Shown here one piece after another: positions 18,641 through 43,933 of a stretch of DNA of 64,000 nt; positions within the stretch are counted from its first letter, which is position 1, and the number at the start of each line of letters is the position of its first letter. The DNA is taken from positions 124,001 through 188,000 of IMG/VR virus record IMGVR_UViG_3300037054_000148; one strand, given 5' to 3'. The translations under genes were made by a program, and so were the position numbers. Under the pieces are notes generated by a model. That model saw nothing but the letters and a program-made list of their open reading frames with translations, made no database searches and was not told where the DNA came from.

Positions 18641-20494
18641 GTGAGTAGCAGACAGAGATTTAGCCAAAAGTCAAGGGAGTCGGTGCTGGGTGGGTTGGTT
18701 GATACTCACATCACAGACAGTACAACTCTGCTTAATGCCCTGGAATTCATTGAATCTCCTAGTGGGCTGAATATAACCTTATACCCAGTTCAGCGTGTTT
18801 TGATCAAATTGATATTTGGCATTCCGATGGACTGGGACGAACGGGAAGTGCCCGTTTACGACCAATTCTGTGAAAAGCTCCTCTTTACTTTTACAGAACG
18901 TGAATATATCCGTTATGTATTCGAGAAGGGTCGGATCAACATCCCCACCTGGGAGGATGCCAACCCGCTGGGATATAATGAGATTGACATGATTGTCGGT
19001 CGCCGTGGTGGTAAGAGCGTTGTGGTCGCCGCAGTTGCTGCCTACAAGCTCTACCTCTTGTTAAGCCATCGAGACCCCCAGGAATACTACGGCTTGGTCC
19101 CCGGTTCCCCGATTGATCTGACTATGATGGCCCAGGATTCCAAGGGGTCTAGTCGGCTTTATGATCAGCTTAAAGAGGATATCAACCGAGCCCCCTTCTT
19201 CGCCCCTTACATTAAATCCATGACAGGTGAGGAGATGACCTTCATCTCTGAATCTGACCGTGGTAAGCGAGAACTCACCCCCTCCATCAAAGCCGCCGCT
19301 TACCCCTGCACCACTAATGCCGTGCGTGGACCCAGCAGTTATTTCCTAGCCTTGGACGAGTTTGCTCACTATCGGCAGCAGATCGGTTCCACCTCTGATG
19401 AGATGTATTCCGCCGCCGCCCCCGCTACTATGCAATTCAAGGGTGGAGGAACCCGTGACGGTCTGAGGGAAAGTATGATTTTTATCATAACTTCCCCAGT
19501 AAATAAAATTGGTAAGTACTATACTTTGTTCAGGGATGCTTTATTGGAAGGCCCTTCTAGTCCTGTCCTAGCCTTCCAATGCTCAACCGCAGAGATGAAC
19601 CCTCGCTCCGACACTCCGTTCTTGAAGAAGGAGTACAAGGATAATCCTGAAAAGTTCAAGGCTGAGTATGGTGGGGAGTTTCTGGATGCATCTGAGACCT
19701 ATGTTAAAGGTTTAACGATTGATGAGTGTGTTGACCAAGATCGGGGTAATGTGACTATCCTCACTTCTTCTATGATAGGCCACAATTACTTCTGGGGTCT
19801 TGATTTGGGTATGAAACATGACGCTACGGCCCTTGCGGTCTGCCACTGGGAGGGGGGTCAGAACAAGGCATGGCTCGTATATGATTACATTGATAGGTTA
19901 ATGGTGGGCCTGGGTAAATATAAAGATGTTGCTGAACTTCCACTAGATGATGTGCTGGACTGGCTAAAGGACGCACATGCAATGCTCCCCTGCTTCCAGG
20001 GTGTGACTGACCAGTATGGTGGTTCCCTTCTGGTTCAGCTACTGAATGCAAATCAGGTAACTGGGATTGAGTTGCTTCATTTGACCTCTGGTGTTAACTC
20101 GCAAATGTACCTCACACTTAAAACTCTCATGGAGAATCGTCAGGTAAAGTTCCCTAATGTGTCTGCATTTGTCTTAGAAATGAAGCTCCTGGAAGCCTCT
20201 TTCATTAATAAATATCAGGTTATCGTTAAGGCTCCGACCGAAAAAGATGCTCATGATGATATGGCAGATGCGGCAGCTCTTGCAGCCTATAAAGCTCAGC
20301 TATGGGCCATAGGTGACGGTAAGCGTGTCATGTGGGACATCATGCAAGGGGTTCCGCAAAACATGATCCCCGGCACTATCAGGGGTGGGTGGGATATGAA
20401 TGGCTCCCTTGCCCATCTCAGATCCTACGAACGACAGCTTCAACATCAATTAAATCCCTATGGTGCGGTTCAAAACCCATGGAGAAGACATTAG
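18641..20494 (+). CDS. terL: Terminase large subunit
   Basis: Walker A VGRRGGKS, Walker B LALDEFAH, coupling motif ITSP, nuclease GLDLGMKHD and HDDMAD. Confidence 0.92.
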   Translation: MSSRQRFSQKSRESVLGGLVDTHITDSTTLLNALEFIESPSGLNITLYPVQRVLIKLIFGIPMDWDEREVPVYDQFCEKLLFTFTEREYIRYVFEKGRINIPTWEDANPLGYNEIDMIVGRRGGKSVVVAAVAAYKLYLLLSHRDPQEYYGLVPGSPIDLTMMAQDSKGSSRLYDQLKEDINRAPFFAPYIKSMTGEEMTFISESDRGKRELTPSIKAAAYPCTTNAVRGPSSYFLALDEFAHYRQQIGSTSDEMYSAAAPATMQFKGGGTRDGLRESMIFIITSPVNKIGKYYTLFRDALLEGPSSPVLAFQCSTAEMNPRSDTPFLKKEYKDNPEKFKAEYGGEFLDASETYVKGLTIDECVDQDRGNVTILTSSMIGHNYFWGLDLGMKHDATALAVCHWEGGQNKAWLVYDYIDRLMVGLGKYKDVAELPLDDVLDWLKDAHAMLPCFQGVTDQYGGSLLVQLLNANQVTGIELLHLTSGVNSQMYLTLKTLMENRQVKFPNVSAFVLEMKLLEASFINKYQVIVKAPTEKDAHDDMADAAALAAYKAQLWAIGDGKRVMWDIMQGVPQNMIPGTIRGGWDMNGSLAHLRSYERQLQHQLNPYGAVQNPWRRH

Positions 20495-22330: not shown

Positions 22331-22663
22331 ATGAGTAAGGCCAATAAGATTCAGGGAACCCCGAAACCAGCCGATGTGAAGCGGGTTGACTCACCTGATC
22401 TGCACCATCTTAAGGCTCGTCAGCGCAAGGTGTACCCACCACATATGCAAGTGCGAAGATGTGGAAACGGGGACTTCTTCGTCAAGCCGCATGGACTCCC
22501 CCACCTTAACCACTGGATCTACTATGACCACTGGGTGGATCGGAAAGACTTGCCGAGCATTATCCACTGGTTTGAGGGGCGCTACCCCGAAACCTGTGGT
22601 TTACCAGTTCGATTCATCAATTGTCCCCCCTTCGAGTGCGGACGGGAAGCTATTCCCAATTGA
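22331..22663 (+). CDS. Hypothetical protein (His/Trp-rich)
   Basis: 110 aa with strong GGAGGAG RBS. Confidence 0.6.
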   Translation: MSKANKIQGTPKPADVKRVDSPDLHHLKARQRKVYPPHMQVRRCGNGDFFVKPHGLPHLNHWIYYDHWVDRKDLPSIIHWFEGRYPETCGLPVRFINCPPFECGREAIPN

Positions 22664-22670
22664 AGTAAAA

Positions 22671-22781
22671 GTGCGGATGACCTGGGACCACGGCTCCCAT
22701 GCCTCACGGCGGGTCATCTCCTGGGTAGCGGGTGGGGTTAAACTCCCCGTCTGCGGAAAGGTTCGAATCCTTTCGCACCTA
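22671..22781 (+). ncRNA. tRNA-like structured RNA, non-canonical
   Basis: T-arm AAAGG-TTCGAAT-CCTTT; termini GTGCG/CGCAC pair; internal hairpins GATGACC/GGTCATC and GGGG-TTAAACT-CCCC. Intergenic. No canonical cloverleaf fit. Confidence 0.5.
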
Positions 22782-23675
22782 CAGTCTTCCCCGCGCAAAA
22801 CCTTCAGCTACTTCAGAGGGTTTTGCGCGAAGTTCTATGACCCCATTGTTATACCAATAAACCCCTAGAAGGGGACTCTCACCATCCGGTGTGCTAAACA
22901 CTTTCTTTCGACCTTTCAGTGCTTTTGACTTGGCTTTATTTTGTTTTTCTTTTTCCTCATCAGTCAAGCTAGCCCAGTAGGCTCTCTGTTTAGCTGATGC
23001 TATTTCGCTTCGTAGTTCTCGCTGCTCTTCTGTCATTGCAGCTTCGCGTCTAGCTGCTACATCTCTTCCGATTTGAGTGAGACGTTCTTTATCCTCCTCT
23101 GTTAGACTAACTCTATAGTTCTTTATACCTTCTCGTTGCGCTTGAACAGTCTTGGTGTAGAGAGCTTCCTGTTCTTCCTGAGTTAACTGTCTCTTCCATG
23201 TCTTCAATCGCTCTGCTCCAGCTACCTGTAAAGCAGTCCGCTTCTTTGAATTCTTTTCCCAGAACTCAACTGTTCCTTGCAGTCTTTCCTTTTTCTCCTC
23301 ATCTGAGCATTCTTTCCAATAATTTACCATCTGGGCCGAATGTAAAGCTCTCGTTTCATCGGTGCAATTCTTCAAGGGGTTCACGGCAATGGGGCAGACG
23401 TTATATCCAATCTCTCTGTCGTATGATTTTAACAAATCCAGATACCGCTGCTCTTTTTGATCAAGTTCTTCCACTGAGCATTCACATAAAACCTCAAATG
23501 TAAACTTTTCAATTCCATATTTTTTGACAGCCGCCAGCAGATGCCGATTGTGGTGGGTGCCTTTTCTGAGTTTGCTCAGGTGTGACCAGAGCCGCCCTTG
23601 AAGATTGATGGATTGACCCACATAGACCTTGCCGTTCACAGTATTAGTTATTAGATAGATACCACTTTTCCGCAT
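22779..23675 (-). CDS. GIY-YIG homing endonuclease, free-standing
   Basis: SGIYLITNTVNGKVYVGQS.NLQGRLWSH, E (DQKEQRYL), GYNVC; helical repeats in the C-terminus. Confidence 0.93.
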   Translation of the reverse strand: MRKSGIYLITNTVNGKVYVGQSINLQGRLWSHLSKLRKGTHHNRHLLAAVKKYGIEKFTFEVLCECSVEELDQKEQRYLDLLKSYDREIGYNVCPIAVNPLKNCTDETRALHSAQMVNYWKECSDEEKKERLQGTVEFWEKNSKKRTALQVAGAERLKTWKRQLTQEEQEALYTKTVQAQREGIKNYRVSLTEEDKERLTQIGRDVAARREAAMTEEQRELRSEIASAKQRAYWASLTDEEKEKQNKAKSKALKGRKKVFSTPDGESPLLGVYWYNNGVIELRAKPSEVAEGFARGRL

Positions 23676-23686
23676 GGAGCCCTTTC

Positions 23687-24316
23687 GTGGAAGAAAATCT
23701 TGATTTTGAGTTTGGAGACAAGCTACCCTATCTGGATGATGAGATTCATCCTGACAGGTGGCTTCGGGCCAGAAATGAAATTGATCACGTAGCCCTTTTG
23801 GAAGAGTTCATTAAGAAACCCATAATGGGGAATGTCATAAATTGCCCGTTGGGGATTCACCGAGACTCTACCCCTTCCTTTAATATATACAGACAGTCCA
23901 ATTCTTCACATTGCTTTGGTTGCCCTGGAACCACGAAAGAGCAGTACAATGACAACGTGAACCTCGTCTCCAAATGGTTTGGTATCAATAAAGTAGCTGC
24001 CTTGCAATGGCTAGAGAAGCATTTTAAGCTCCCCCCGATTGCAGGACAACCTATCGAACCTGACGAGGAAGAAGAAAGGGACGAGGAGGAATCCGATCCA
24101 TTCACGGTGAAGGATCTGGTTCCAATGTTCCTTACGATAGCCCCCACTCTGATTGAAACAGTGGATGACGCTAAGTATCTGATAAAGAAATACTTCTTGG
24201 CTCTTCATCTTGACGATCCACTATTTTTGGCACGGGTTCTTGGACGAAAGCGGCTTGAGAGTATTAGATTATCAGGACGAGTGTCGAATGAAGGAATTGG
24301 AAGAAGCAATAAATGA
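23687..24316 (+). CDS. DNA primase zinc-binding (CHC2) domain protein
   Basis: INCPLGIHRDSTPSFNIY..HCFGC..DNVNLVSKW..AALQWL matches the DnaG CHC2 zinc finger; no Toprim domain in this ORF. Confidence 0.85.
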   Translation: MEENLDFEFGDKLPYLDDEIHPDRWLRARNEIDHVALLEEFIKKPIMGNVINCPLGIHRDSTPSFNIYRQSNSSHCFGCPGTTKEQYNDNVNLVSKWFGINKVAALQWLEKHFKLPPIAGQPIEPDEEEERDEEESDPFTVKDLVPMFLTIAPTLIETVDDAKYLIKKYFLALHLDDPLFLARVLGRKRLESIRLSGRVSNEGIGRSNK

Positions 24317-27300
24317 GCAAGATCCTGTAATAACGGGAAAGAAGCCTCGTAAAAAGAAGGAAAAGGCTGAGAAAAAGCCCAAGGCCCCCAAAGTAATTAA
24401 AACCCTCCGTGAGATATTTATGGAGAGGTTGGCCCTCATCGATATCGAAAACTTGAAGAAGCCATGGATGGCTACCAAATCGTTCAGGTTGATTGATACG
24501 GCGGAGGAGCTTCAACGCTGGGTTGATATGGTCATGAGCGATCCTGGACGCTCCCAGACCCACTCATGGGCTGCTCACACTGGCCCCGTCATTGCGGTGG
24601 ACACCGAGACGGATGGCCTGGATATTCGTGTAGTTGAAGGGAAGATGCGAACCAAGCTGGCAGGAGTCTGTCTGTCAGCCGATGGACTGGAAGGTCTCTA
24701 CATTCCGGTCGGGCATGAGAATGGGAAGAACATTCCCGCCACTGAGTTGGCCCCGATCCTCCAGAAGCTCTTTGACCAGTGCCACCTCGTATTTTTTAAC
24801 GCCAAATTTGACCGTGAGGTATTGCGACTCAGCCTTGGTCTGACTTTCAGGGATTACCCGTTCTTTGAAGATGTACAGACGCTGACCTACCTGGATGACC
24901 CTAAAGCCAAAGTTGATGACAAAGGGGCTGGCAGCCTTCAAGAGGGCCTGAAGAATCTTTCCAAGGTGAAGCTGGGGTTTGAACAGATTGAACTGGAAGA
25001 TCTGGTCAAGGTCAAGGCCAAGGTATGGAATGTGGAGTTGGAGAAGTACACCCAGCGTATGGTTTACTGCCCATTCACTTGGGTTCCTACAGAAATGGCT
25101 CTTTGGTACGCGGCTTCTGATGCAATTACCACTTGGCTGCTCTGGCGATTATTCCACCAGGAGCGAGATTTCTCCCAGATGTTGGGGGTCCATCGACTTG
25201 ACCATCTATTAGTGGACACCATTACCTGGATTGAGCGGCAGCGTCCTCGTGTGGATGGGGATCGTCTGCAAAATACTATTGACTTTCACGCTAGTCGGGT
25301 GAAGCAACTTACTGAAGAATTGGGTAAGATTTCCGGCATCGAAAATTTCAATCCCGGCTCTACTCCTCAGATCACCAAAATTCTTTTTGAGGACAGGGGT
25401 ATGGAGGTGATTGAACGGTCTGAGAAGACTAACGATCCGTCTACAGCTATTGGGGTGCTGAAAGAGCTTCATAAACGATACCCTACTGATGAATTTCTGA
25501 TTAAATTGATGGATTTTCGTGAGTACGCGGCTCTGCATCCAGCTAGTATGCGTTATGACCCAGTTGACCACACAATTAGGTTCTACCTCAAACAGAACGT
25601 TGTGGCTGGCGGTCGTCTCGCGGCTGCGGGTGGAGAGTTTGAAAAGGATGGCGGGTGCCAACTTAACCCCCAGGCTATCAAGAAGGTGGGTGGAAATTGG
25701 TGGGTCAAAGGGTGGCTGTTGGACACGCTTCCAGAAGAGTTCGCCGCTCTGACGATTCTCACGGAGTATCCGGACCCCTCTATGCTAGAACCCTCTTGTG
25801 TTAAGGATGGAAAGATCGCCCCCAATATCGACTCCAATAACCACACGGCCACCTATTTTGGCAGACGCTACTGCATGGTCCCCTCCTGTAAGTCTTGTTT
25901 ACGGGCGCTAAAACCAGAGCGGATAGACGCCAATGAGATTATCAATTTCCGAGGTCTGATTGTTGCGGATCCAGGCTGGACGATGTTCAGTTCTGACTAC
26001 AGCAATATTGAAATGAGAGTAGCAGCAAACATTTCAAAAGAACCGCTATTCATCAAGGAGTTCATGGAAGGGGCGGGAGACTTCCACTCTCTCACCGCTA
26101 TGGCCCTTTTCCCTGAGTTTTCTAATCCCAACACCCCCAAGGCCAGAAAAAAAGAGCTTCGTGCATTGGCCAAAATTATTAACTTCGCTTTGTTGTATGG
26201 CGGGACTGCCTATACGATCAAAGAGAACATGAATAAGGAGGGGTTCAACATTAGCTTTGAAGAAGCTGAAGAACTGGTCCAAAAATATTGGGATTCAGTG
26301 CCCACGTTCGCCGCATGGTGCCAGAATAAGCGTGATGTGGCCAGAGCGAAATTGATCTGCCGTACTCCAACGGGTCGGATCGTTAATTTTGAATCAGCCA
26401 TGAAGGGATTCCGTATCCATAAGCCAGAGCAGTGGGAGAAGGACAATTTCTGGGAGTGGAAGAAGTTATGTAAGCGTGAGGTAGAGCTTACTCGCTTGGA
26501 GCTTAAAGAGGATGCGTTGGCGGTAAAGAGGACTGCGGAGGCAATTTGGGCTAATCCTAAATCTGGAGTGCGTAACGTTCAGGAGTTCAATCGTTTCCTG
26601 GGCAAGGCAGAGCGGGTAGCCATCAACATCCCGCTTCAGGGGACCGCAGGAGATCTAATGCGCTCCGCCCTAAATCGGATTCGTATTTGGGCATTGGCCA
26701 ACCCAGGTCTAGAGAAGGTGTTCCGTCTTCACCTTACTGTGCATGATGAAATTGACTTTTCAGTGAAGAATGAGTTCGTACCCTATGTGCTGCCTAGGGT
26801 TAACCGATTGATGAAGCTCCGCAAACTCCATGCATCTAAGGGATGGCCGGTACCTATCGAAACAGACTGTGAGTATGGACAGACCTGGGATGTGAACCAG
26901 CACCTTACTGGAGATGATGGTCATAAGGCGGCTGGATGGACGGCCATTGCGGGAATGGAAGCTTACACCCCTCCTGATTTCGCTGAAGATGTGGTAGACC
27001 GGATTGTTGACACATGGATGAAGGGCGACCGAGAGCGGGTAACTAAGTGGTTGCAACAGCTTCATCCCAGAGTTCATGGCTATTTGGCAGAGTTTAATGA
27101 TGACCCTGAGACGGTCCGTCATTACCTCATTGTAATGCTCCAACTCCACGAATTTTGGAAAATCGATGAAGATGAAAGTGACACGTTGACCTTGTTGGAG
27201 TATGCGGAGGAGAATGGTTTGAAGATAACTGAAGAGCCCCTGGTGGGTAATCTTTCGGGCTATTTGAACTCCGTCCCCCCGGAGGACATACCTATTGTCA

Positions 27301-27677
27301 CAGAGGTGGTGTTGGAACCAGAGGCTCAGTCTGAGCCAGAGCTAGCGGTAGAGCCGGAAACTGAGAAAATCACTTCCATCGAACAGCTTCATGAAATGGT
27401 ACAGAATGTCGTAGAGATGGCAGCAGCCGGAGAAGTGGAAGAGGAAGTGTTCTTTCAGGAACCCCCTCGTAAAGAGGTAGCTCAGGTTGTGGGTACAGCC
27501 CCAAAAATTCCAGTTGTTCGGAATATGGACCTGGATGAACAAAAGGTGTTCAAGACACTAATAGGAGCAGGTTTGGGTAGAAAGGAGATCGAATTTGTTT
27601 ACGAATTTGATAGCAAATATTACAAGATACCTAACACTATTACTGATGTGATTCCCAAGGAATACCTGCTATGTTAG
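24288..27677 (+). CDS. polA: Family A DNA polymerase with 3'-5' exonuclease, no 5'-3' exonuclease (ORF open from 24210)
   Basis: ExoI AVDTETDG, ExoII FFNAKFD, ExoIII YAASDA; motif A DYSNIEMR, motif B RALAKIINFALLYG, motif C LTVHDEI. Confidence 0.95.
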   Translation: MKELEEAINEQDPVITGKKPRKKKEKAEKKPKAPKVIKTLREIFMERLALIDIENLKKPWMATKSFRLIDTAEELQRWVDMVMSDPGRSQTHSWAAHTGPVIAVDTETDGLDIRVVEGKMRTKLAGVCLSADGLEGLYIPVGHENGKNIPATELAPILQKLFDQCHLVFFNAKFDREVLRLSLGLTFRDYPFFEDVQTLTYLDDPKAKVDDKGAGSLQEGLKNLSKVKLGFEQIELEDLVKVKAKVWNVELEKYTQRMVYCPFTWVPTEMALWYAASDAITTWLLWRLFHQERDFSQMLGVHRLDHLLVDTITWIERQRPRVDGDRLQNTIDFHASRVKQLTEELGKISGIENFNPGSTPQITKILFEDRGMEVIERSEKTNDPSTAIGVLKELHKRYPTDEFLIKLMDFREYAALHPASMRYDPVDHTIRFYLKQNVVAGGRLAAAGGEFEKDGGCQLNPQAIKKVGGNWWVKGWLLDTLPEEFAALTILTEYPDPSMLEPSCVKDGKIAPNIDSNNHTATYFGRRYCMVPSCKSCLRALKPERIDANEIINFRGLIVADPGWTMFSSDYSNIEMRVAANISKEPLFIKEFMEGAGDFHSLTAMALFPEFSNPNTPKARKKELRALAKIINFALLYGGTAYTIKENMNKEGFNISFEEAEELVQKYWDSVPTFAAWCQNKRDVARAKLICRTPTGRIVNFESAMKGFRIHKPEQWEKDNFWEWKKLCKREVELTRLELKEDALAVKRTAEAIWANPKSGVRNVQEFNRFLGKAERVAINIPLQGTAGDLMRSALNRIRIWALANPGLEKVFRLHLTVHDEIDFSVKNEFVPYVLPRVNRLMKLRKLHASKGWPVPIETDCEYGQTWDVNQHLTGDDGHKAAGWTAIAGMEAYTPPDFAEDVVDRIVDTWMKGDRERVTKWLQQLHPRVHGYLAEFNDDPETVRHYLIVMLQLHEFWKIDEDESDTLTLLEYAEENGLKITEEPLVGNLSGYLNSVPPEDIPIVTEVVLEPEAQSEPELAVEPETEKITSIEQLHEMVQNVVEMAAAGEVEEEVFFQEPPRKEVAQVVGTAPKIPVVRNMDLDEQKVFKTLIGAGLGRKEIEFVYEFDSKYYKIPNTITDVIPKEYLLC

Positions 27678-28182: not shown

Positions 28183-30498
28183 ATGGCAGGAAGACGTAGG
28201 CAGACGAGAATCAAAGTAGCAAGTAAGGATATTCCGCAGTTCTCTGTGGGGAAATACTCCAGTTTTGATACCAATGGCACAGTTGTGGACCCCATTAGGA
28301 GTGCCTCCTCTGCTGATGCTAAAGTCAGAATGGCCAATAAGATGCGGAAGAGTGCTGATCTATGGGCTGGAGAGAATGGTCCTGCCAACATTTCTGATTC
28401 TGAGAATATTGGCTATTATAGCTATGAGTTCCCTGTGGATGCGTTGGAACTCCCGCAATCCAGAGCCCAGGAACTCCGATTTTACCGTCTAGCCTATGAT
28501 CGTGACCCCATCGTTGGAAGGGGTATTGATCTCCATACTGAAATCCCCATGAACAAGATCAACCTTGATCGTCCTAAGTGCTCATCTGAGGCTTTTGGAG
28601 ATTACATTTACGACTTCTATCAGGGATTGGTAACCAATTCAAGATTGTTTGAGACCCTTCTTCACGCTAGCCGTGAGTATTGGAACATTGGTGAAGCCTT
28701 CCTATTCGTAGAGGACGACCCTGACATCAAGCCATCTGAGGCGGCTGAAGAGTATGTTCAGGCCATGGATGAACAAGACGATCAGAAAATGGCAGAACAG
28801 GGTCAGTCCCGTTCTTATTTCGAAACTGACAACACCTCTTGGGGTTCTGAAGCGGTCAGCATGACCACCAAGCACTCCTCCGCCAAGTTGGCAGCCCAAT
28901 TGGGGTTTGATCCTCTTGCTGAGACTGACAAGGCTATTCGCAAGAAAGTAGCGGCTCTGACTCAGATTATGAGTGACTTGAAGACCTTGGAAAAGACTGC
29001 TGAGGCTAAACAAGCTGCCCCCCCAGCAGATGATGGAGGTGGAGCAGCCGTTGGAGAATCAACTGATGCCCCAACCGGTGGAGCGGATCTTCCGGCCCCA
29101 GGGGATGAGACGGGTGGGGGTGACGCAGACTTAGGCTTCGAAGACGACACGGCTGGTGGAGGTGGTGGAATTATGCCCTCCAGCGGTGGCGGAGGCGGGG
29201 GAGGGGGCTTTGGTGGCGGTGGCATGGATATGGGCCTGGATGATACGGGCACTGGCATGGAGCAGCCTGTTCCTCCTAAAGACTTAGAAACTCGCAGAAT
29301 GGAAGAAGTGATCAAGCTCTTGAGGAGAAAGAAAGACCTCTTGGAGGAGTTAGAAGATCTTCATGAGATCCGAAAGAACGACTTCGAGCTTTTCTCGCAT
29401 CTGTGCAACAAGAATTACATGGGATTTGACCGTATTCAGCTTCTTCCGCCTGAAAATGTGGAAATCAAGAAATCTTCAACCTTTGGTTCTGAACCTACGA
29501 TATTCTATAAGCCCCCAGAAGACGCCAAGGCGTCCTATATTGACAATCCGGATACCCCGGATGCGGTCCGAGATAGCCTTTCGGCGGATGGGGTCATCCC
29601 CTTGAATGATAACCCATTCAAGGGCTCTTATGCGATTCATTTCGCTCGTAAAAAAGCCCCATTTGAGGATCATGGACGTAGTATTCTTCAGCGTTGCATG
29701 AGAAGTATCATCTACCGTGAGAAGCTCCGTCAGGTCCAGACAACCATCGCTTCCCGCAATATGACCCCTAAAACTTTAGTGGTCGCTCCGGGTGTGGCGA
29801 ATGGAGAATTGATGGCCCTTAGAGGCCATATTGACGAGGCCAAAGCGGATCCGGATTATACCGTAGTGGTGAACTATGAATGCACCTGGAACGAGATTGG
29901 TTCTGAGGGTCGCCTTCTCACCCTGGATGGTGAGTGGAGCCATACCGGCAATGATCTAGCCATCGGTTTGGGCTTCAGTCCTGATATCCTCAACGGCGAA
30001 GGGCTCTACAGCAACACCCGTACTCAGTTGGATATCCTTAGCACTACCTACCTCCAGTTCCGCGCAGTCGTTGCTTATATCGTGCAGGAATTGATATTCA
30101 AGCCCATCGCAATGAAGAAGGGCTTCTATGAGATCGACCGTTATGGCCGTCCCCGCTGGCTCTACCCAGAAGTAAAATTTGGCCGCATGGCTCTTCGCAA
30201 TGCCGGAGAGACCTATCAGATGCTGTTTGATCTTTACCAGAAGGGTTCGGTGCCGGTTAGCGTCCTGCTTGAGCTTCTTGATGTAGACCCAGAAGTTTGC
30301 CGTAAGAACCTGGAGGCTGACCTCTTTACTGTCAATGACTCTAAGTTTAACGCTTTCTTGGAGAACCTCTATAGCAACGTTGCTGGCTCTGGCTCGTTCA
30401 CTACAACTGACATTGCAGATAAATTCAAACGTGCGCTTGGTTTGAAGGAAAAGGATATCGATGAATCTGAGATCGAAGGTTCTGGCGAGGGCATCTAA
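28183..30498 (+). CDS. Portal protein with a large low-complexity internal insertion
   Basis: FYRLAYDRDPIVGRGIDLHTEIP, EYW..GEAFLF and HFARK..PFEDHGRSILQRC..YREKLRQVQ fit large-phage portals; Gly/Asp-rich insert in the middle. Confidence 0.82.
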   Translation: MAGRRRQTRIKVASKDIPQFSVGKYSSFDTNGTVVDPIRSASSADAKVRMANKMRKSADLWAGENGPANISDSENIGYYSYEFPVDALELPQSRAQELRFYRLAYDRDPIVGRGIDLHTEIPMNKINLDRPKCSSEAFGDYIYDFYQGLVTNSRLFETLLHASREYWNIGEAFLFVEDDPDIKPSEAAEEYVQAMDEQDDQKMAEQGQSRSYFETDNTSWGSEAVSMTTKHSSAKLAAQLGFDPLAETDKAIRKKVAALTQIMSDLKTLEKTAEAKQAAPPADDGGGAAVGESTDAPTGGADLPAPGDETGGGDADLGFEDDTAGGGGGIMPSSGGGGGGGGFGGGGMDMGLDDTGTGMEQPVPPKDLETRRMEEVIKLLRRKKDLLEELEDLHEIRKNDFELFSHLCNKNYMGFDRIQLLPPENVEIKKSSTFGSEPTIFYKPPEDAKASYIDNPDTPDAVRDSLSADGVIPLNDNPFKGSYAIHFARKKAPFEDHGRSILQRCMRSIIYREKLRQVQTTIASRNMTPKTLVVAPGVANGELMALRGHIDEAKADPDYTVVVNYECTWNEIGSEGRLLTLDGEWSHTGNDLAIGLGFSPDILNGEGLYSNTRTQLDILSTTYLQFRAVVAYIVQELIFKPIAMKKGFYEIDRYGRPRWLYPEVKFGRMALRNAGETYQMLFDLYQKGSVPVSVLLELLDVDPEVCRKNLEADLFTVNDSKFNAFLENLYSNVAGSGSFTTTDIADKFKRALGLKEKDIDESEIEGSGEGI

Positions 30499-37013: not shown

Positions 37014-38015
37014 ATGAAACTTCTGGTTAAAACGATCTACGGTTCTAAACTGTTCGGCACCGCCCTCCCCACTTCTGATACGGACCTAAAAGCCGTGTTC
37101 GTATGCGACATGGAGGGGTTGGTTTTCAATAAAACCGATGCGGAGAACACGGTGGAGGGAAAGGGAAGCCAGAAGGTCGAGTTCGAAGCACACCACATTT
37201 CCAACTTTTGCCGTATGCTCAAGCAGGGGCAGACTCTGGCCTACAGCATGTTGTTCACGCCAAAGGATTTGGTGGTCAGCACCTCTGATGCATGGGAGGA
37301 GTTGGTGGAGAACAAGGCTCGGCTGGTGAGCAAGAATCTTCGGCCCTTTGTCGGCTATGCTCGTTCCCAGGCTCAGAAATACAGTCTGAAGGGGGAGCGT
37401 CTGGCCACTCTTGATCATTTCATTGAGGACATTAAGATGTTCCTGGATGAAAAAGAAGTCACCCCCAATGGTCGTCTTTATGAATCCGCTTTTTGTGGGC
37501 TCATGGAGCATTACAAGGATGCTGAGGGTGCTAGACTTTGGACTGAGCACACAGCCAACATGGACGTTCGGCATATCGAGATCTGTGGCAAGAGTTTCGG
37601 TGAGACTACCCCTCTGAAGTTGTGGGTAACACCCCTGATGGAGCTTCGCAGTCGCTACGGGGGCCGCTCCCAACAGGCCAAAGAGGACAAGGGCATTGAT
37701 TTGAAGGCCATGTATCATGCGGTTCGGATCACAAGTGAGATGAACGAAATCCTCACCACTGGTAGTCTCACATACCCTAGGCCAGAGGCCCCACTGCTCA
37801 TGGATATTCGCAATGGCAAGTTGACGAATCGTGAGGTTGGTGATATCATCGACCGTCTCATCTGTACGGGTGACGAGTTGTTTGAAACCTCCACTCTTCG
37901 GGATAAACCTGATGCTGAGTGGCTGGATGACTGGCAGCTTCGCACTCAAGGTGACGCAGCCTTCTGGGCTTGGAGTAATCGAAATGCCATGGTGAGGCCC
38001 AATGCACGTTCCTGA
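37014..38015 (+). CDS. Nucleotidyltransferase (Pol beta superfamily, YcgL/RlaP-like)
   Basis: YGSKLFGTALPTSDTDLKAVF (GS..xDxD motif) and C-terminal KAMYHAVR..E..TG.LT.PR..LL.IR.G typical of the family. Confidence 0.85.
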   Translation: MKLLVKTIYGSKLFGTALPTSDTDLKAVFVCDMEGLVFNKTDAENTVEGKGSQKVEFEAHHISNFCRMLKQGQTLAYSMLFTPKDLVVSTSDAWEELVENKARLVSKNLRPFVGYARSQAQKYSLKGERLATLDHFIEDIKMFLDEKEVTPNGRLYESAFCGLMEHYKDAEGARLWTEHTANMDVRHIEICGKSFGETTPLKLWVTPLMELRSRYGGRSQQAKEDKGIDLKAMYHAVRITSEMNEILTTGSLTYPRPEAPLLMDIRNGKLTNREVGDIIDRLICTGDELFETSTLRDKPDAEWLDDWQLRTQGDAAFWAWSNRNAMVRPNARS

Positions 38016-41794: not shown

Positions 41795-42872
41795 TATCAA
41801 AAAGCTCAAAGGACTCAAGTGGTATATCCTTGAAGTCAGATCAGAGCGAACAGTAGAGAACGTAATTCGTCGTGTTGGTAAGACCATGCCTACTATATTT
41901 AAGGACGGAGGGTCTTGTGAGGTGTTTGTTCCGATAGAGGACCGAGATCTCAATTTGTTTAGCCTATCCACCTCCTCCTATGTGTTTCTCCGTTCTGATC
42001 GAAAGAAAGAATTACAGAAGTTCAAAGGGGTCACAGGTGTGGTAGGGATCCTCTGTGAGGGGGAGCAGCAGCGGATTGATAAGGCCCTGATGGTGGAGGA
42101 TGACTACGTTCAGGAATTAATCAAGATGACAGAGGAGAAGTTTATGAAGAGCCCAGAGTCCATACAGGTCGGCTCCTTTGTTCGTATTCTGGATGGTTTG
42201 GATAAAGGGTTCTGTGGGCATGTATCTCGCATAGATCGAGGCTACGCCCTGATCCGGGTTGAGCTTAAAACTAGACAGATGTTCATTGATACTCCTCTGC
42301 ACAATCTCAAAGATTTGAGTTTTGTGCCACCCAACTCAAGAGTGTTTTACTACTCTGACTTAGTGGACGAGTATGTGAAGGATTACAGTGATGAGGCCAT
42401 CATGACCCTAGCTAAGGATTTGGAGTTTGTGATGGAGGTGACTGAACCCCTCCCCTCTGATGAACCAGATGAAAAGAAAGTCAAGTATGGTCGGCAGAAG
42501 ACCGTTACGGCCATGACAAAGAAATTGATATTCAGCGGCATCAAAGACCCAAAGGTCATAATTAAAGAAGCATTGGCAGCCATTGAATCAAGTGACATCA
42601 AAAAACCGAAGAGTGCGTTTATCTTCTATTCAATCCTTAAACAGGCCATCATGGAGACCCTGTTCAAAGATGATAGTAGGATCAAAACTTATAAAGATGT
42701 GGTCAAGTATTACGGGGATTCTTACCGTTTTTCTCCAAAAATGATCGCTGAATTGGATGAACATTCGATCCTATCTCCAAAAAGCGAGACCTCGGATAAA
42801 TCGAATCAGCACTCTACAGTAATAAAAATCAAACTGACCAAGGAGTCAAAATGTCAAACACCACCGGAATAG
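41775..42872 (+). CDS. NusG-family transcription factor (NGN + KOW) with a ~200-aa C-terminal extension
   Basis: KWYILEV, EVFVP, SYVFL, GVVGIL (NGN); IQVGSFVRILDGLDKGFCGHV (KOW). ORF is open from 41724. Confidence 0.85.
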   Translation: MILQYGDIKKLKGLKWYILEVRSERTVENVIRRVGKTMPTIFKDGGSCEVFVPIEDRDLNLFSLSTSSYVFLRSDRKKELQKFKGVTGVVGILCEGEQQRIDKALMVEDDYVQELIKMTEEKFMKSPESIQVGSFVRILDGLDKGFCGHVSRIDRGYALIRVELKTRQMFIDTPLHNLKDLSFVPPNSRVFYYSDLVDEYVKDYSDEAIMTLAKDLEFVMEVTEPLPSDEPDEKKVKYGRQKTVTAMTKKLIFSGIKDPKVIIKEALAAIESSDIKKPKSAFIFYSILKQAIMETLFKDDSRIKTYKDVVKYYGDSYRFSPKMIAELDEHSILSPKSETSDKSNQHSTVIKIKLTKESKCQTPPE

Positions 42873-43933
42873 GATTAGATATTGGTACCGCTTACATCGT
42901 CTCTGCCAAATCTGACATCGACAATAAAGTCAAAATTAGCTCGGTAAGGGACTGCTTTCTTGCTCTCCCTCTGGATCAATCTCCCGCATTGGAGATTGCG
43001 GGAGTGGAGTTCATTGAGGGTGCAGAGGAGGTCTATGTGGTCGGTAACGATGCGATCAATTTGATTGGTGTCCTCGGAGGGGAGCTACGCCGTCCTCTCA
43101 GCAAGGGCTTTATCAGTCCCAAGGAAGAAGATGGGAAGGAGATACTTCAACTCATCCTTCAGCAGATCCTTGGAAAGCCCCAGGTTCCGGGGGAGCTTGT
43201 GGCTTTCTCAGTACCTGGGCCTATTTTTGACGTTGAATCCACGGTCGCCCCTAAACCCAGCCATGATTCCTCTCTGACCTTCCATACCAGCTTCTTCAAG
43301 AATCTGATCACCGATCTGGGTTATACGGCCCGTCCGGTCAACGAAGCGGTAGCAGTCTGCTTCAATGAAACCGTGGTCCCCAAGAACCCATCTGAAACCC
43401 CCCTAACCGGACTCTCAATTTCGTTTGGTGCTGGCACTACAAATTTGGCCTTAACATTCAAATCTATTCCTGTTAAGTGCTTTGCTCTTCCCTTCGGCGG
43501 AGATTATGTAGACCAGATGGCAGCCAAGGCCACTGATTCCACACTTTCTCATGTAACTTTGTTGAAAGAACGTGGTGTTGATTTGATGACTGGACTCGTA
43601 ACAACCAAGGGTGAGTTTGACGATACCCAGACTGAACGTCAGGCCGAAGCAATTGCAGTCGCCTATGCAGACCTAATCACTAAATTGGTCAACGCCACCA
43701 ATAAATTCTTCAGCTTCAATGAGAATCGTGTGGAAATCCCTGATACTATTCCGGTCATCCTGGCGGGTGGGACTACTAAGGCCCCCAATTTCATGAAACT
43801 TTTCAATAAAATTTTCATGGAGAATCTTGATGTGAGATTCAAAGTTTCAGAGGCAAGGCTGTCCGCAACTCCTTTGGATGCTACGGCCAGTGGCTGCTTG
43901 AACTTCGTCCGGATCCTTCAGAAAAGAGGCTAA
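42851..43933 (+). CDS. Actin-fold ATPase (MreB/MamK/ParM-like)
   Basis: Phosphate 1 GLDIGTAY, connect 1 NEAVAV, phosphate 2 SFGAGTTN, FGGDYVD, adenosine LAGGTTKAPNF. Confidence 0.88.
   Translation: MSNTTGIGLDIGTAYIVSAKSDIDNKVKISSVRDCFLALPLDQSPALEIAGVEFIEGAEEVYVVGNDAINLIGVLGGELRRPLSKGFISPKEEDGKEILQLILQQILGKPQVPGELVAFSVPGPIFDVESTVAPKPSHDSSLTFHTSFFKNLITDLGYTARPVNEAVAVCFNETVVPKNPSETPLTGLSISFGAGTTNLALTFKSIPVKCFALPFGGDYVDQMAAKATDSTLSHVTLLKERGVDLMTGLVTTKGEFDDTQTERQAEAIAVAYADLITKLVNATNKFFSFNENRVEIPDTIPVILAGGTTKAPNFMKLFNKIFMENLDVRFKVSEARLSATPLDATASGCLNFVRILQKRG

What the first reader, a model, noticed from the sequence alone, without database searches (positions are those of the whole stretch)
22671..22781. 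Non-canonical tRNA-like RNA with a perfect T-arm but a branched 5' domain
Seen: 5' GTGCG pairs with 3' CGCAC. A three-way junction (GATGACC/GGTCATC enclosing TGGGA/TCCCA and GCC/GGC hairpins) sits in or before the D-arm position. It is followed by a D-loop-like CCTGGGTAG, a GGGG-TTAAACT-CCCC arm and the canonical T-arm AAAGG-TTCGAAT-CCTTT. There is no encoded CCA and no canonical anticodon loop. It does not fit tRNA-Sec, tRNA-Pyl or the permuted order of YrlA as I know them. Inference: a tRNA mimic (for example a decoy for anticodon nucleases or a T-loop-processed ncRNA), or a degenerate tRNA.
Basis: partly seen in the sequence, partly recalled or inferred. Interest (0 to 1): 0.62.

Follow-up and report, generated by a model that had tools for sequence, protein, structure and literature searches.

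The report
Phage tRNA-shaped RNA with extra arm
A small group of uncultivated giant phages carries a conserved gene for a roughly 113-base RNA that has the ends and elbow of a transfer RNA but a large extra arm where the D-stem should be; it is a real, selected RNA of unknown job, probably a tRNA mimic, not a working decoder.

Summary
At window 22669-22781 (+) there is a 7-bp acceptor-like stem, a canonical T arm, a GGGUA D-loop-like linker and no encoded CCA. A ~43-nt extra domain replaces tRNA positions 8-13.

ARAGORN and Rfam call nothing. After in-silico removal of ~36 nt, ARAGORN calls a tRNA in all three full-length variants. A covariance model of the element aligns end to end with genuine T4 tRNAs, skipping the extra domain.

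Four sequence variants exist, all in related jumbo phages whose nearest cultured relative is Tunturiibacter phage Tunturi_5. Base pairing is kept in 98% of cells against 36-50% in slid controls. There are many two-sided compensatory changes. 73% of columns are invariant against 42% at terminase third codon positions. G·U pairs make only the + strand fold well.

It is therefore a selected RNA, not a decaying tRNA or a DNA site. It is probably cut out of a polycistronic transcript by tRNA-maturation enzymes and acts as a non-decoding tRNA mimic. Function was not tested. Whether the extra domain is a three-way junction is unresolved. Closest analogues are the 'E-loop' irregular tRNAs attributed to acidobacteria and T4 species 1 RNA. 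I rate it a new variant of a known kind.

The parts
22669..22781 (+). Whole tRNA-shaped RNA element (about 113 nt), from the 5' acceptor strand to the discriminator
   Evidence: CM R1 built from three variants matches 22661-22783 at 147 bits. The boundaries are set by the upstream stop codon TGA at 22661-22663 and by the point where homology to L001/L005 ends after CAG at 22784.
22669..22675 (+). Acceptor-like stem, 5' strand (AAGTGCG)
   Evidence: Pairs with 22774-22780. One two-sided change (G:C to C:G) and one C:G to U·G change among variants. The two outermost pairs each fail in one variant.
22676..22718 (+). Extra domain replacing tRNA positions 8-13: stem H1 (22676-22682 with 22712-22718) enclosing hairpin 1a (22683-22699) and hairpin 1b (22700-22711)
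   Evidence: H1 has one two-sided change (C:G to U:A) and one G:C to G·U change. Hairpin 1b has C:G, U·G and U:A at its inner pair across four variants. Hairpin 1a is 16/17 invariant. RNAalifold proposes an alternative interior of similar energy.
22719..22727 (+). Single-stranded linker UCCUGGGUA, D-loop-like (GGGUA invariant in three variants, GGGCA in L047)
   Evidence: Aligns with G18 G19 U20 A21 of genuine T4 tRNAs in the R1 alignment. Conservation.
22728..22754 (+). 10-bp hairpin with 7-nt loop UUAAACU (anticodon-limb equivalent)
   Evidence: 100% paired in three variants, with 6 variable pairs. In L047 there are 9 pairs, 6 of them changed on both sides relative to the window. The loop motif YUAA is kept in all four variants.
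22755..22756 (+). GG spacer between the long hairpin and the T arm
   Evidence: Invariant in all four variants.
22757..22773 (+). Canonical T arm: AAAGG / UUCGAAU / CCUUU, with the G53:C61 equivalent
   Evidence: Loop invariant in three variants; UCCGAAU in L047. Four of the five stem pairs show two-sided changes across the four variants.
22774..22780 (+). Acceptor-like stem, 3' strand (CGCACCU)
   Evidence: Pairs with 22669-22675.
22781..22781 (+). Discriminator-position base (A), followed by CAG and not CCA
   Evidence: Read directly from the sequence. The equivalent tails are A-CAG, A-CAG, U-CAG and G-CAU in the four variants.

Best explanation
The element is a gene for a structured RNA of about 113 nt, carried on the coding strand of a jumbo phage between a small ORF and the primase-like gene. 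It has no room for its own promoter or terminator, so it is made as part of a polycistronic transcript.

Its 7-bp closing stem stacked on a 5-bp T stem, with a canonical T loop, forms the 12-bp minihelix that RNase P, 3' tRNA-processing enzymes and the CCA-adding enzyme recognise. It is therefore most likely cut out and matured like a tRNA. CCA would be added after transcription, because none is encoded.

The 10-bp hairpin has the length of a stacked D stem plus anticodon stem. The GGGUA linker can dock on the T loop. The body probably adopts a tRNA-like L shape. The D stem is missing; in its place a highly conserved domain of about 43 nt projects from the junction.

I propose that the mature RNA acts in trans as a tRNA mimic, not as a decoder. 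The extra arm and the conserved hairpin loop motif (YUAA) would be the parts read by a partner, which could be a host or phage tRNA-binding protein.

Shown: the fold, selection on it, the strand, the tRNA-like scaffold, and the restricted distribution.
Inferred: processing, L shape, trans action, non-decoding role.

My probabilities: selected structured RNA about 0.9; matured by tRNA enzymes about 0.65; non-decoding mimic about 0.5-0.6.
For: Structure:
- 38 pairs in 6 helices are 98.2% paired in three variants, against 36-50% when the partners are slid by 1-3 columns. 0 of 500 column shuffles reach that value.
- 15 pairs vary. 13 of them keep pairing in every variant. The two that fail are the outermost acceptor pairs.
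- A fourth, 5'-truncated variant (L047; R1 21.8 bits, E 2.5e-4) keeps every pair of hairpin 1b, the long hairpin and the T stem. Across the four variants, 10 of those 19 pair positions show a two-sided change.

Strand:
- 19 G·U cells give 98.2% pairing on the + strand against 82.5% on the - strand.
- The + strand folds 7-8 kcal/mol better in all three variants.

Selection:
- 73% of element columns are invariant, against 42% of terminase third codon positions in the same three phages.

tRNA scaffold:
- Removing about 36 nt in silico makes ARAGORN, at default thresholds, call a tRNA in all three variants.
- R1 aligns full length to the T4 tRNAs Gln, Pro, Thr, Arg and Gly at 21-11 bits, with the 43-nt domain skipped.

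Against a decoding role:
- There is no D stem.
- Position 37 is a pyrimidine.
- The triplet at positions 34-36 is AAA, AAA or AAC.
- The L047 loop is 11 nt and its T loop has C at position 55.

Extra arm is functional:
- H1 5' strand plus hairpin 1a is 22/24 invariant, the most conserved part together with the T loop.

No own promoter or terminator:
- The element starts 5 nt after the upstream stop codon. In L001 and L047 it ends about 25-35 nt before the primase-like start.
- No terminator-like site follows it on the + strand.
Against: - There is no expression data of any kind. Processing, CCA addition and trans action are inferred only from what is established about minihelix substrates.
- Only four variants exist, one of them truncated, and all come from one phage clade. 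Statistical power is limited and R-scape-type significance cannot be claimed.
- Single-sequence MFE folds differ between variants, and z-scores are modest.
- The outermost acceptor pairs are mismatched in two of the three variants, which could impair RNase P or 3' processing.
- In the two lineages without later insertions, the element lies directly upstream of the primase-like gene. That equally fits a cis-acting role.
- No partner protein has been identified.
Confidence: 0.5

Rival explanations
1. Cis-acting processing or stability element ('tRNA punctuation'). The tRNA-like fold exists only so that RNase P and 3' processing cut the long transcript between the sigma-like/small-ORF block and the primase-polymerase block. 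This would set different stabilities or translation rates for the two halves. The excised RNA itself would have no job.
For: - The element is wedged between ORFs with no own promoter or terminator.
- In L001 and L047 it lies about 25-35 nt upstream of the primase-like start codon.
- It sits exactly at the border between two gene blocks that abut directly in relatives lacking it.
Against: - A minihelix alone would suffice for cleavage. Yet the extra domain and the hairpin loop motif are the most conserved parts.
- The window phage has a reverse-strand homing endonuclease between the element and the primase-like gene, and L005 has a 112-aa ORF there, so tight coupling is dispensable.
- Close relatives manage without any such element.
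Confidence: 0.2
2. A working but irregular tRNA. It would be aminoacylated and used on the ribosome, like the allo-tRNAs and 'E-loop' tRNAs reported from acidobacteria and soil metatranscriptomes. It might act as a missense or nonsense suppressor, with the extra arm as an identity element.
For: - Three variants have a 12-bp acceptor/T branch, a 7-nt loop with U33, and an anticodon limb of the correct length.
- ARAGORN calls Phe(AAA) or Val(AAC) once the extra domain is removed.
- Irregular tRNAs with an extra loop between the acceptor stem and the D stem have been described from forest and peat-soil metatranscriptomes and attributed to acidobacteria (PMC5389517, PMC7609411).
- The nearest cultured relative of this phage infects an acidobacterium.
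Against: - A34 with a pyrimidine at position 37 is highly atypical for a decoder.
- The triplet at 34-36 changes identity (AAA to AAC) within the clade.
- L047 has an 11-nt loop and C55.
- There is no D stem. A 43-nt domain sits where the D stem of a ribosome-bound tRNA contacts the large subunit (established structural knowledge; inference).
- The ORFs of the window read through normally in code 11, so no recoding needs a suppressor.
- The published E-loop tRNA was not charged by E. coli enzymes.
Confidence: 0.15
3. A DNA-level feature and not an RNA: the recognition site of the adjacent GIY-YIG homing endonuclease, a remnant tRNA-type attachment site, or an origin-like structure.
For: - A GIY-YIG endonuclease gene (22779-23675, minus strand) ends exactly inside the 3' end of the element.
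- In T4 the GIY-YIG gene segB also sits inside the tRNA cluster.
Against: - Pairing is strand-specific through 19 G·U cells.
- Compensatory changes preserve an RNA fold, not a DNA sequence.
- Endonuclease genes or their remnants occupy the same spot upstream of the primase-like gene in relatives that lack the element (L044, L046 and the P0005 contig). The endonuclease therefore follows the primase 5' end.
- No second copy or direct repeat of the 3' half exists in the window.
- No cellular tRNA matching the element was found.
Confidence: 0.05
4. A decaying phage tRNA gene that suffered an insertion and is drifting.
For: - No tRNA caller or Rfam model accepts it.
- The acceptor stem has mismatches.
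- The T loop is altered in L047.
Against: - Conservation is well above the synonymous-site level (73% against 42% invariant).
- Nearly all stem substitutions keep pairing.
- The 'insertion' is the best conserved part.
- The element persists in four lineages whose primase-like proteins are only 65-82% identical.
Confidence: 0.03

Closest known systems
'E-loop' and other irregular tRNAs / allo-tRNA-like sequences from forest and peat-soil metatranscriptomes, attributed to acidobacteria (Mukai et al. 2017, PMC5389517; review PMC7609411)
   Same: - tRNA-shaped RNAs with an extra structured element between the acceptor stem and the D region.
- Doubtful decoding role; the tested E-loop tRNA was not charged by E. 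coli synthetases.
- Plausibly the same ecological setting, since the nearest cultured relative of this phage infects an acidobacterium from soil.
   Different: - Those are described as 8/4 branch tRNAs with a D stem and a real anticodon (GCU), and they occur in tRNA polycistrons near toxin-antitoxin genes.
- This one is a single phage gene. It has a 7/5 branch (8/4 or 9/3 registers are possible but untested), no D stem, a 43-nt domain instead of a loop, and a 10-bp hairpin.
Bacteriophage T4 species 1 RNA (rnaC), a small stable RNA of unknown function in the T4 tRNA cluster
   Same: - Same order of parts in my fold of the annotated 139-nt RNA: a closing stem joining the 5' and 3' ends, a large 5' hairpin domain, a linker, a 10-bp hairpin, and a canonical T arm (CCGGG-UUCGAAU-CCCGG).
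- It is phage-encoded, has no recognisable anticodon function, and lies next to a GIY-YIG homing endonuclease gene (segB).
   Different: - There is no detectable sequence homology: R1 scores it only 9.3 bits and not over its full length.
- rnaC lies among genuine tRNA genes, whereas this element is the only tRNA-like gene in 64 kb.
- The resemblance is architectural and rests on an MFE prediction.
Canonical bacterial and phage tRNA (Rfam RF00005)
   Same: - 7-bp acceptor stem.
- 5-bp T stem with a UUCGAAU loop and G53:C61.
- GG in the D-loop position.
- 7-nt loop with U33.
- Discriminator base, and a CCA-less gene.
- R1 aligns to T4 tRNAs.
   Different: - No D stem.
- A 43-nt insertion at positions 8-13.
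- The variable-region strand pairs with positions 22-26 to give a 10-bp arm.
- Pyrimidine at position 37.
- Not detected by ARAGORN or Rfam.
tmRNA tRNA-like domain; bacterial Y RNA (YrlA); mascRNA; plant-virus 3' tRNA-like structures
   Same: All reuse an acceptor/T-arm module so as to be handled by tRNA enzymes while doing a non-decoding job. This is the functional analogy I favour.
   Different: - There is no tag reading frame and there are no pseudoknots; ARAGORN finds no tmRNA.
- There is no Rfam match to YrlA. mascRNA scores only 12.5 bits against a cut-off of 42.5.
- The element is not at the 3' end of an RNA genome.
- The domain order is not permuted.

Membership tests
Canonical tRNA | 7-bp acceptor stem closing the 5' and 3' ends, plus a discriminator base | tested here: met
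   22669-22675 pairs with 22774-22780. All 7 pairs form in L001; there is one mismatch each in the window and L005. There is one two-sided compensatory change.
Canonical tRNA | T arm: 5-bp stem, 7-nt loop UUCRANY, G53:C61 | tested here: met
   AAAGG-UUCGAAU-CCUUU. The loop is invariant in three variants and the stem covaries. L047 has UCCGAAU.
Canonical tRNA | D arm with a 3-4 bp stem formed by positions 10-13 and 22-25 | tested here: not met
   No conserved partner exists for positions 22-25; they pair with the variable-region strand instead. ARAGORN finds only weak, inconsistent D stems after artificial deletion.
Canonical tRNA | 5-bp anticodon stem, 7-nt loop with U33 and a purine at 37, and a conserved anticodon | tested here: not met
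   The loops are UUAAACU, CUAAAUC and CUAACCU: U33 is present, position 37 is a pyrimidine, and the triplet is AAA/AAA/AAC. L047 has an 11-nt loop.
Canonical tRNA | Recognition by tRNA detectors or Rfam RF00005 | tested here: not met
   ARAGORN finds 0 genes in the window and all loci. Rfam gives nothing at gathering score and no RF00005 hit at E up to 10. tRNAscan-SE was not available.
tRNA-Sec | 8/5 (or 9/4) branch, 6-bp D stem with a 4-nt loop, long variable arm, UCA anticodon | tested here: not met
   RF01852 scores 12.9 bits against a cut-off of 47, and only on L001. No UCA lies in a loop preceded by U.
tmRNA | tRNA-like domain plus a tag-peptide reading frame and pseudoknots (standard or permuted) | tested here: not met
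   ARAGORN tmRNA search is negative. There are no Rfam tmRNA hits. The element is only 113 nt long.
Allo-tRNA / E-loop irregular tRNAs (Mukai 2017) | Extra structured element between the acceptor stem and the D region | tested here: met
   The 43-nt domain 22676-22718 follows directly on the acceptor 5' strand. The feature is described.
Allo-tRNA / E-loop irregular tRNAs (Mukai 2017) | 8/4 or 9/3 acceptor/T branch | tested here: inconclusive
   G22676·U22773 and A22677:U22772 could extend the acceptor to 9 bp at the expense of H1 and the T stem. The columns involved are invariant, so covariation cannot decide (reading of alignment A4).
Allo-tRNA / E-loop irregular tRNAs (Mukai 2017) | Long variable arm and Sec-like D arm; sequence homology to the published members | tested here: not met
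   The long variable arm and Sec-like D arm were tested here and are absent: only GG lies between the long hairpin and the T stem, and there is no D stem. Sequence homology to the published members could not be tested, because no supplementary text with their sequences is held.
T4 species 1 RNA (rnaC) | Sequence/structure homology to T4 rnaC | tested here: not met
   R1 scores rnaC 9.3 bits, partial. Only the order of the domains is similar.
Hammerhead or other small self-cleaving ribozymes (considered because of GAUGA and GAAA near a multi-helix junction) | Conserved catalytic core (CUGAnGA ... GAAA) flanked by three stems | tested here: not met
   GAUGA is base-paired in H1, which has covariation support. 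No ribozyme family appears in the Rfam scans at E up to 10.

The most novel reading that the evidence does not exclude
The element could be a natural 'tRNA-scaffolded' effector. A phage would use the tRNA ends and elbow to get an RNA matured, stabilised and delivered to tRNA-handling proteins. The invariant extra arm and the conserved YUAA loop would then bind and neutralise a specific host factor, for example a tRNA-targeting defence nuclease or a tRNA-dependent enzyme. This would be an RNA-based counter-defence of a kind not yet described for DNA phages. It could also finally suggest a role for T4 species 1 RNA-like molecules.
Probability: 0.15. Interest if true: 0.85.

Novelty: new variant of a known kind. 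Interest (0 to 1): 0.6.

Why it matters
Phage-encoded tRNA look-alikes that are not decoders have been known since T4 species 1 RNA but remain unexplained. Irregular tRNAs with extra loops from soil bacteria are equally obscure.

This element is a clean, covariation-supported example. The tRNA parts needed for maturation are kept. The D stem is replaced by a strongly conserved extra arm. The gene sits in an accessory-gene hot spot of jumbo phages.

It gives a defined, short RNA on which to test two questions: whether phages use tRNA mimicry as a tool against the host, and how far tRNA-processing enzymes tolerate added domains. It is also a practical warning that standard tRNA and Rfam scans miss such genes.

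Tried and rejected
- ARAGORN on the window and on all fetched loci found nothing. Relaxed ARAGORN settings gave only inconsistent junk calls.
- Rfam at gathering score and at E up to 10 gave nothing meaningful.
- BLAST of the element or of its 5' domain against 50,697 GenBank phages gave no real hit.
- Eight pattern or protein scans of IMG/VR and one scan of JGI metagenomes found only three full-length variants.
- One pattern scan of 185,579 species genomes returned 19 chance hits. 17 are ordinary tRNAs with a chance upstream match and 2 have no tRNA. None resembles the element, so no cellular homologue or att-type donor was found.
- A CM search of the window, of related loci and of the first 28.7 kb of Tunturi_5 found no paralogue or distant copy.
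- Walking outward through primase-like and 110-aa protein homologues yielded one new truncated variant (L047) and showed that more distant relatives lack the element.
- I rejected a hammerhead reading, an archaeal bulge-helix-bulge intron (H1 is an uninterrupted 7-bp helix with no bulges), an attP remnant, tRNA-Sec, tRNA-Pyl and tmRNA.
- I first modelled a 5-bp 'anticodon stem' and an MFE-type register. Both were superseded by the 10-bp hairpin.
- My early impression that the hairpin loop evolves neutrally was corrected by L047, which keeps the motif CUAAAC.
- The idea that the homing endonuclease targets the element was weakened by finding endonucleases at the same spot in phages without the element.
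- Literature searches for Tunturiibacter phage and for T4 species 1 RNA found nothing in the held library.

Full report
**Setting**

The window is phage DNA. Nearly all ORFs lie on the + strand.
- Large terminase: 18641-20494.
- Portal-like protein: 28183-30498.
- Family A DNA polymerase: 24210-27677.
- Primase zinc-ribbon protein: 23687-24316.
- Also a clamp loader, a RecA-like protein, an SNF2 helicase and an actin-like 'volactin'.

The sequence is identical to a 313.6-kb IMG/VR contig. The best cultured relative is the 308.7-kb Tunturiibacter phage Tunturi_5, isolated from Finnish soil on an acidobacterium. Its polymerase is 40% identical and it has the same gene order: terminase, sigma-like gene, primase, polymerase.

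**The observation**

ARAGORN finds no tRNA or tmRNA in the 64 kb. Rfam 15 has no hit at gathering score, and only noise at E up to 10. The 24-nt T-arm/acceptor string is unique in the window even with three mismatches allowed, with none expected by chance.

**Homologues**

- Exact and degenerate pattern scans of IMG/VR and of JGI metagenomes recovered only three full-length sequence types: the window type, L001 and L005.
- A scan of one genome per species returned 19 chance hits. 17 are ordinary tRNAs with a chance upstream match, 2 have no tRNA, and none resembles the element.
- GenBank phages have nothing similar.
- Walking outward through homologues of the primase-like protein gave a fourth, more distant variant on a 900-nt Logan contig (L047). 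Its primase-like protein is 65% identical, and it is cut off at its 5' end. My covariance model scores it 21.8 bits, E 2.5e-4.
- Relatives whose primase-like protein is 46-58% identical have the sigma-like and primase-like genes abutting, or carry only endonuclease genes or their remnants between them. They have no element.

**Structure**

RNAalifold and explicit pair counting agree on a four-helix junction:
- a 7-bp closing (acceptor-like) stem;
- stem H1 (7 bp) carrying the extra domain;
- a 9-nt linker YCMYGGGUA;
- a 10-bp hairpin with a 7-nt loop;
- GG;
- a 5-bp T stem with the loop UUCGAAU.

In three variants, 98.2% of 114 pair cells are standard pairs. The figure is 36-50% when partners are slid by 1-3 columns, and no column shuffle out of 500 reaches the observed value. 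Fifteen pairs vary. Thirteen of them keep pairing in every variant; the two failures are the outermost acceptor pairs.

L047 keeps every pair of hairpin 1b, of the long hairpin (9 bp) and of the T stem. Across the four variants, 10 of those 19 pair positions show a two-sided change, for example A:U to G:C and G:C to C:G.

Nineteen G·U cells make the fold strand-specific: 98.2% paired on the + strand against 82.5% on the - strand. The + strand also folds 7-8 kcal/mol better in each variant. Single-sequence folds are not consistent between variants and their z-scores are modest. The case is therefore comparative, not thermodynamic.

**What stays unresolved in the fold**

The interior of the extra domain can be drawn in two ways:
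- as an extension of H1 with a small terminal hairpin.

The energies differ by about 1 kcal/mol and the variable positions fit both. An 8/4 or 9/3 register of the acceptor/T branch is also possible, but it involves only invariant columns.

**Selection**

The phages are more diverged than their protein identities suggest.
- Terminase third codon positions are only 57-63% identical pairwise. Only 42% are invariant among the three phages.
- By contrast, 73% of the element's columns are invariant.
- The most conserved parts are the T loop (7/7), the GGGUA of the linker, and the 5' strand of H1 with hairpin 1a (22/24).
- The hairpin loop keeps the motif YUAA in all four variants, even in L047, where the loop is 11 nt.

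No ORF spans the element in L001. The substitution pattern is pair-wise, not codon-wise.

**How tRNA-like is it?**

- Removing about 36 nt in silico, anywhere from the H1 5' strand to the H1 3' strand, makes ARAGORN at default thresholds call a tRNA in all three variants: Phe-AAA, Phe-AAA and Val-AAC.
- Run on the T4 tRNA cluster, my model aligns end to end with genuine tRNAs (Gln 21.1 bits, Pro 16.7, Thr 13.9, Arg 13.0, Gly 10.8) while skipping its 43-nt domain. GGGUAG falls on G18 G19 U20 A21 G22.
- The scaffold is thus a tRNA lacking nucleotides 8-13.
- The strand that would be positions 22-26 pairs with the variable-region strand. This gives a 10-bp arm equal in length to a stacked D stem plus anticodon stem. 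That equivalence is my inference from standard tRNA geometry.

The features that argue against decoding are:
- no D stem;
- a pyrimidine at position 37;
- A at position 34;
- a change of triplet within the clade;
- an 11-nt loop and C55 in L047.

**Genomic logic**

- The element begins 5 nt after the stop codon of the upstream ORF.
- In L001 and L047 it ends about 25-35 nt before the primase-like start codon.
- No promoter-like or terminator-like site flanks it on the + strand.
- It lies in a variable stretch between the sigma-like and primase-like genes. That stretch also holds a conserved 110-aa ORF.
- In L001 and L005 the stretch holds a 140-aa ORF of a widely travelling phage family as well. 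That ORF matches phrog_22771 and is 55% identical to proteins of Pseudomonas temperate phages.
- In L005 there is also a 112-aa ORF.
- In the window there is a reverse-strand GIY-YIG homing endonuclease whose stop codon overlaps the last bases of the element.
- Endonuclease genes or their remnants occupy the same place in relatives without the element. The endonuclease is therefore tied to the primase 5' end, not to the RNA.

**Interpretation**

The comparative data establish a selected, + strand, tRNA-shaped RNA. The 12-bp acceptor/T minihelix with a canonical T loop is the known minimal substrate of RNase P, tRNA 3'-processing enzymes and the CCA-adding enzyme (established knowledge).

I therefore infer that the RNA is excised from the polycistronic transcript and matured like a tRNA. 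I also infer that it works in trans as a non-decoding mimic, with the extra arm and the loop motif as the specific surfaces.

The main rival is a purely cis-acting 'punctuation' signal between the two gene blocks. A real irregular decoder, a DNA-level site and a dying pseudogene are progressively less likely, for the reasons listed under the rivals.

**Comparison with what is known**

The nearest described things are:
- the irregular 'E-loop' tRNAs, which have an extra loop between the acceptor stem and the D stem, were found in forest and peat-soil metatranscriptomes and are attributed to acidobacteria (PMC5389517, PMC7609411);
- T4 species 1 RNA (rnaC). In my fold it shows the same order of parts: closing stem, large 5' domain, 10-bp hairpin, canonical T arm. 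It also neighbours a GIY-YIG endonuclease gene.

Neither is demonstrably homologous. The element fails defining features of canonical tRNA, tRNA-Sec and tmRNA, so I do not file it under any of them.

**Verdict**

This is a real and unusual small RNA gene, and a new variant within the loose class of phage and bacterial tRNA-like RNAs. Its fold is well supported. Its function is open.

Noticed in passing
window 22779-23675 (-); L044 4800-5000; L046 4080-5000: A GIY-YIG homing endonuclease gene is inserted between the RNA element and the primase-like gene, and its stop codon overlaps the 3' end of the element. Relatives that lack the element carry an endonuclease gene, or a remnant plus a duplicated primase 5' end, at the same spot. 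The endonuclease therefore appears to home to the start of the primase gene.
   Followed up: partly
window 22792-22802 / 22819-22829: A perfect 11-bp inverted repeat (CGCGCAAAACC ... GGTTTTGCGCG) with a 16-nt loop lies just 3' of the element. It sits inside the endonuclease cassette and inside the mechanical 3' end of the endonuclease ORF. No U-tract follows on either strand. It is absent from L001 and L005.
   Followed up: no
window 37014-38015 (+): A 333-aa nucleotidyltransferase of the RlaP 'RNA repair pathway' family (PF10127, 2e-7; phrog_388, 1e-64). It hints that the phage manipulates RNA 3' ends. No RNA ligase or kinase was recognised next to it.
   Followed up: partly
window 22738-22744; L001, L005 and L047 equivalents: The loop of the long hairpin keeps the motif YUAA(A/C) in all four variants, although the loop is 7 nt in three of them and 11 nt in L047. 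In the 7-nt loops, UUA/CUA occupy positions 32-34 and not 34-36. The meaning is unexplained.
   Followed up: partly
L047 1-100: The most distant variant has C instead of U at T-loop position 55 (UCCGAAU) and GGGCA instead of GGGUA in the linker. Both lie at the presumed elbow contact.
   Followed up: no
L045 118-3051; L049 1-3087: In related phages the large terminase gene is expanded to 977 aa or more than 1355 aa and carries LAGLIDADG / Hom_end hits. This indicates intein or homing-endonuclease insertions in the terminase.
   Followed up: no
L005 2409-2831 (-); L001 1699-1944 (-): The 140-aa ORF directly upstream of the element in two variants belongs to phrog_22771. It is about 55% identical to proteins of Pseudomonas temperate phages (JBD44, Ab31) and Caulobacter jumbo phages. 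It is a horizontally mobile accessory gene and is absent from the window phage.
   Followed up: partly
window 42851-43933 (+): An actin-like protein of the 'volactin' family (PF25216, 3e-48) is encoded in this jumbo phage.
   Followed up: no
L043 (T4 70908-71046, rnaC): T4 species 1 RNA folds with an unusually strong z-score (-4.6). The fold has a closing stem, a long 5' hairpin, a 10-bp hairpin and a canonical T arm, an architecture parallel to the element studied here.
   Followed up: partly
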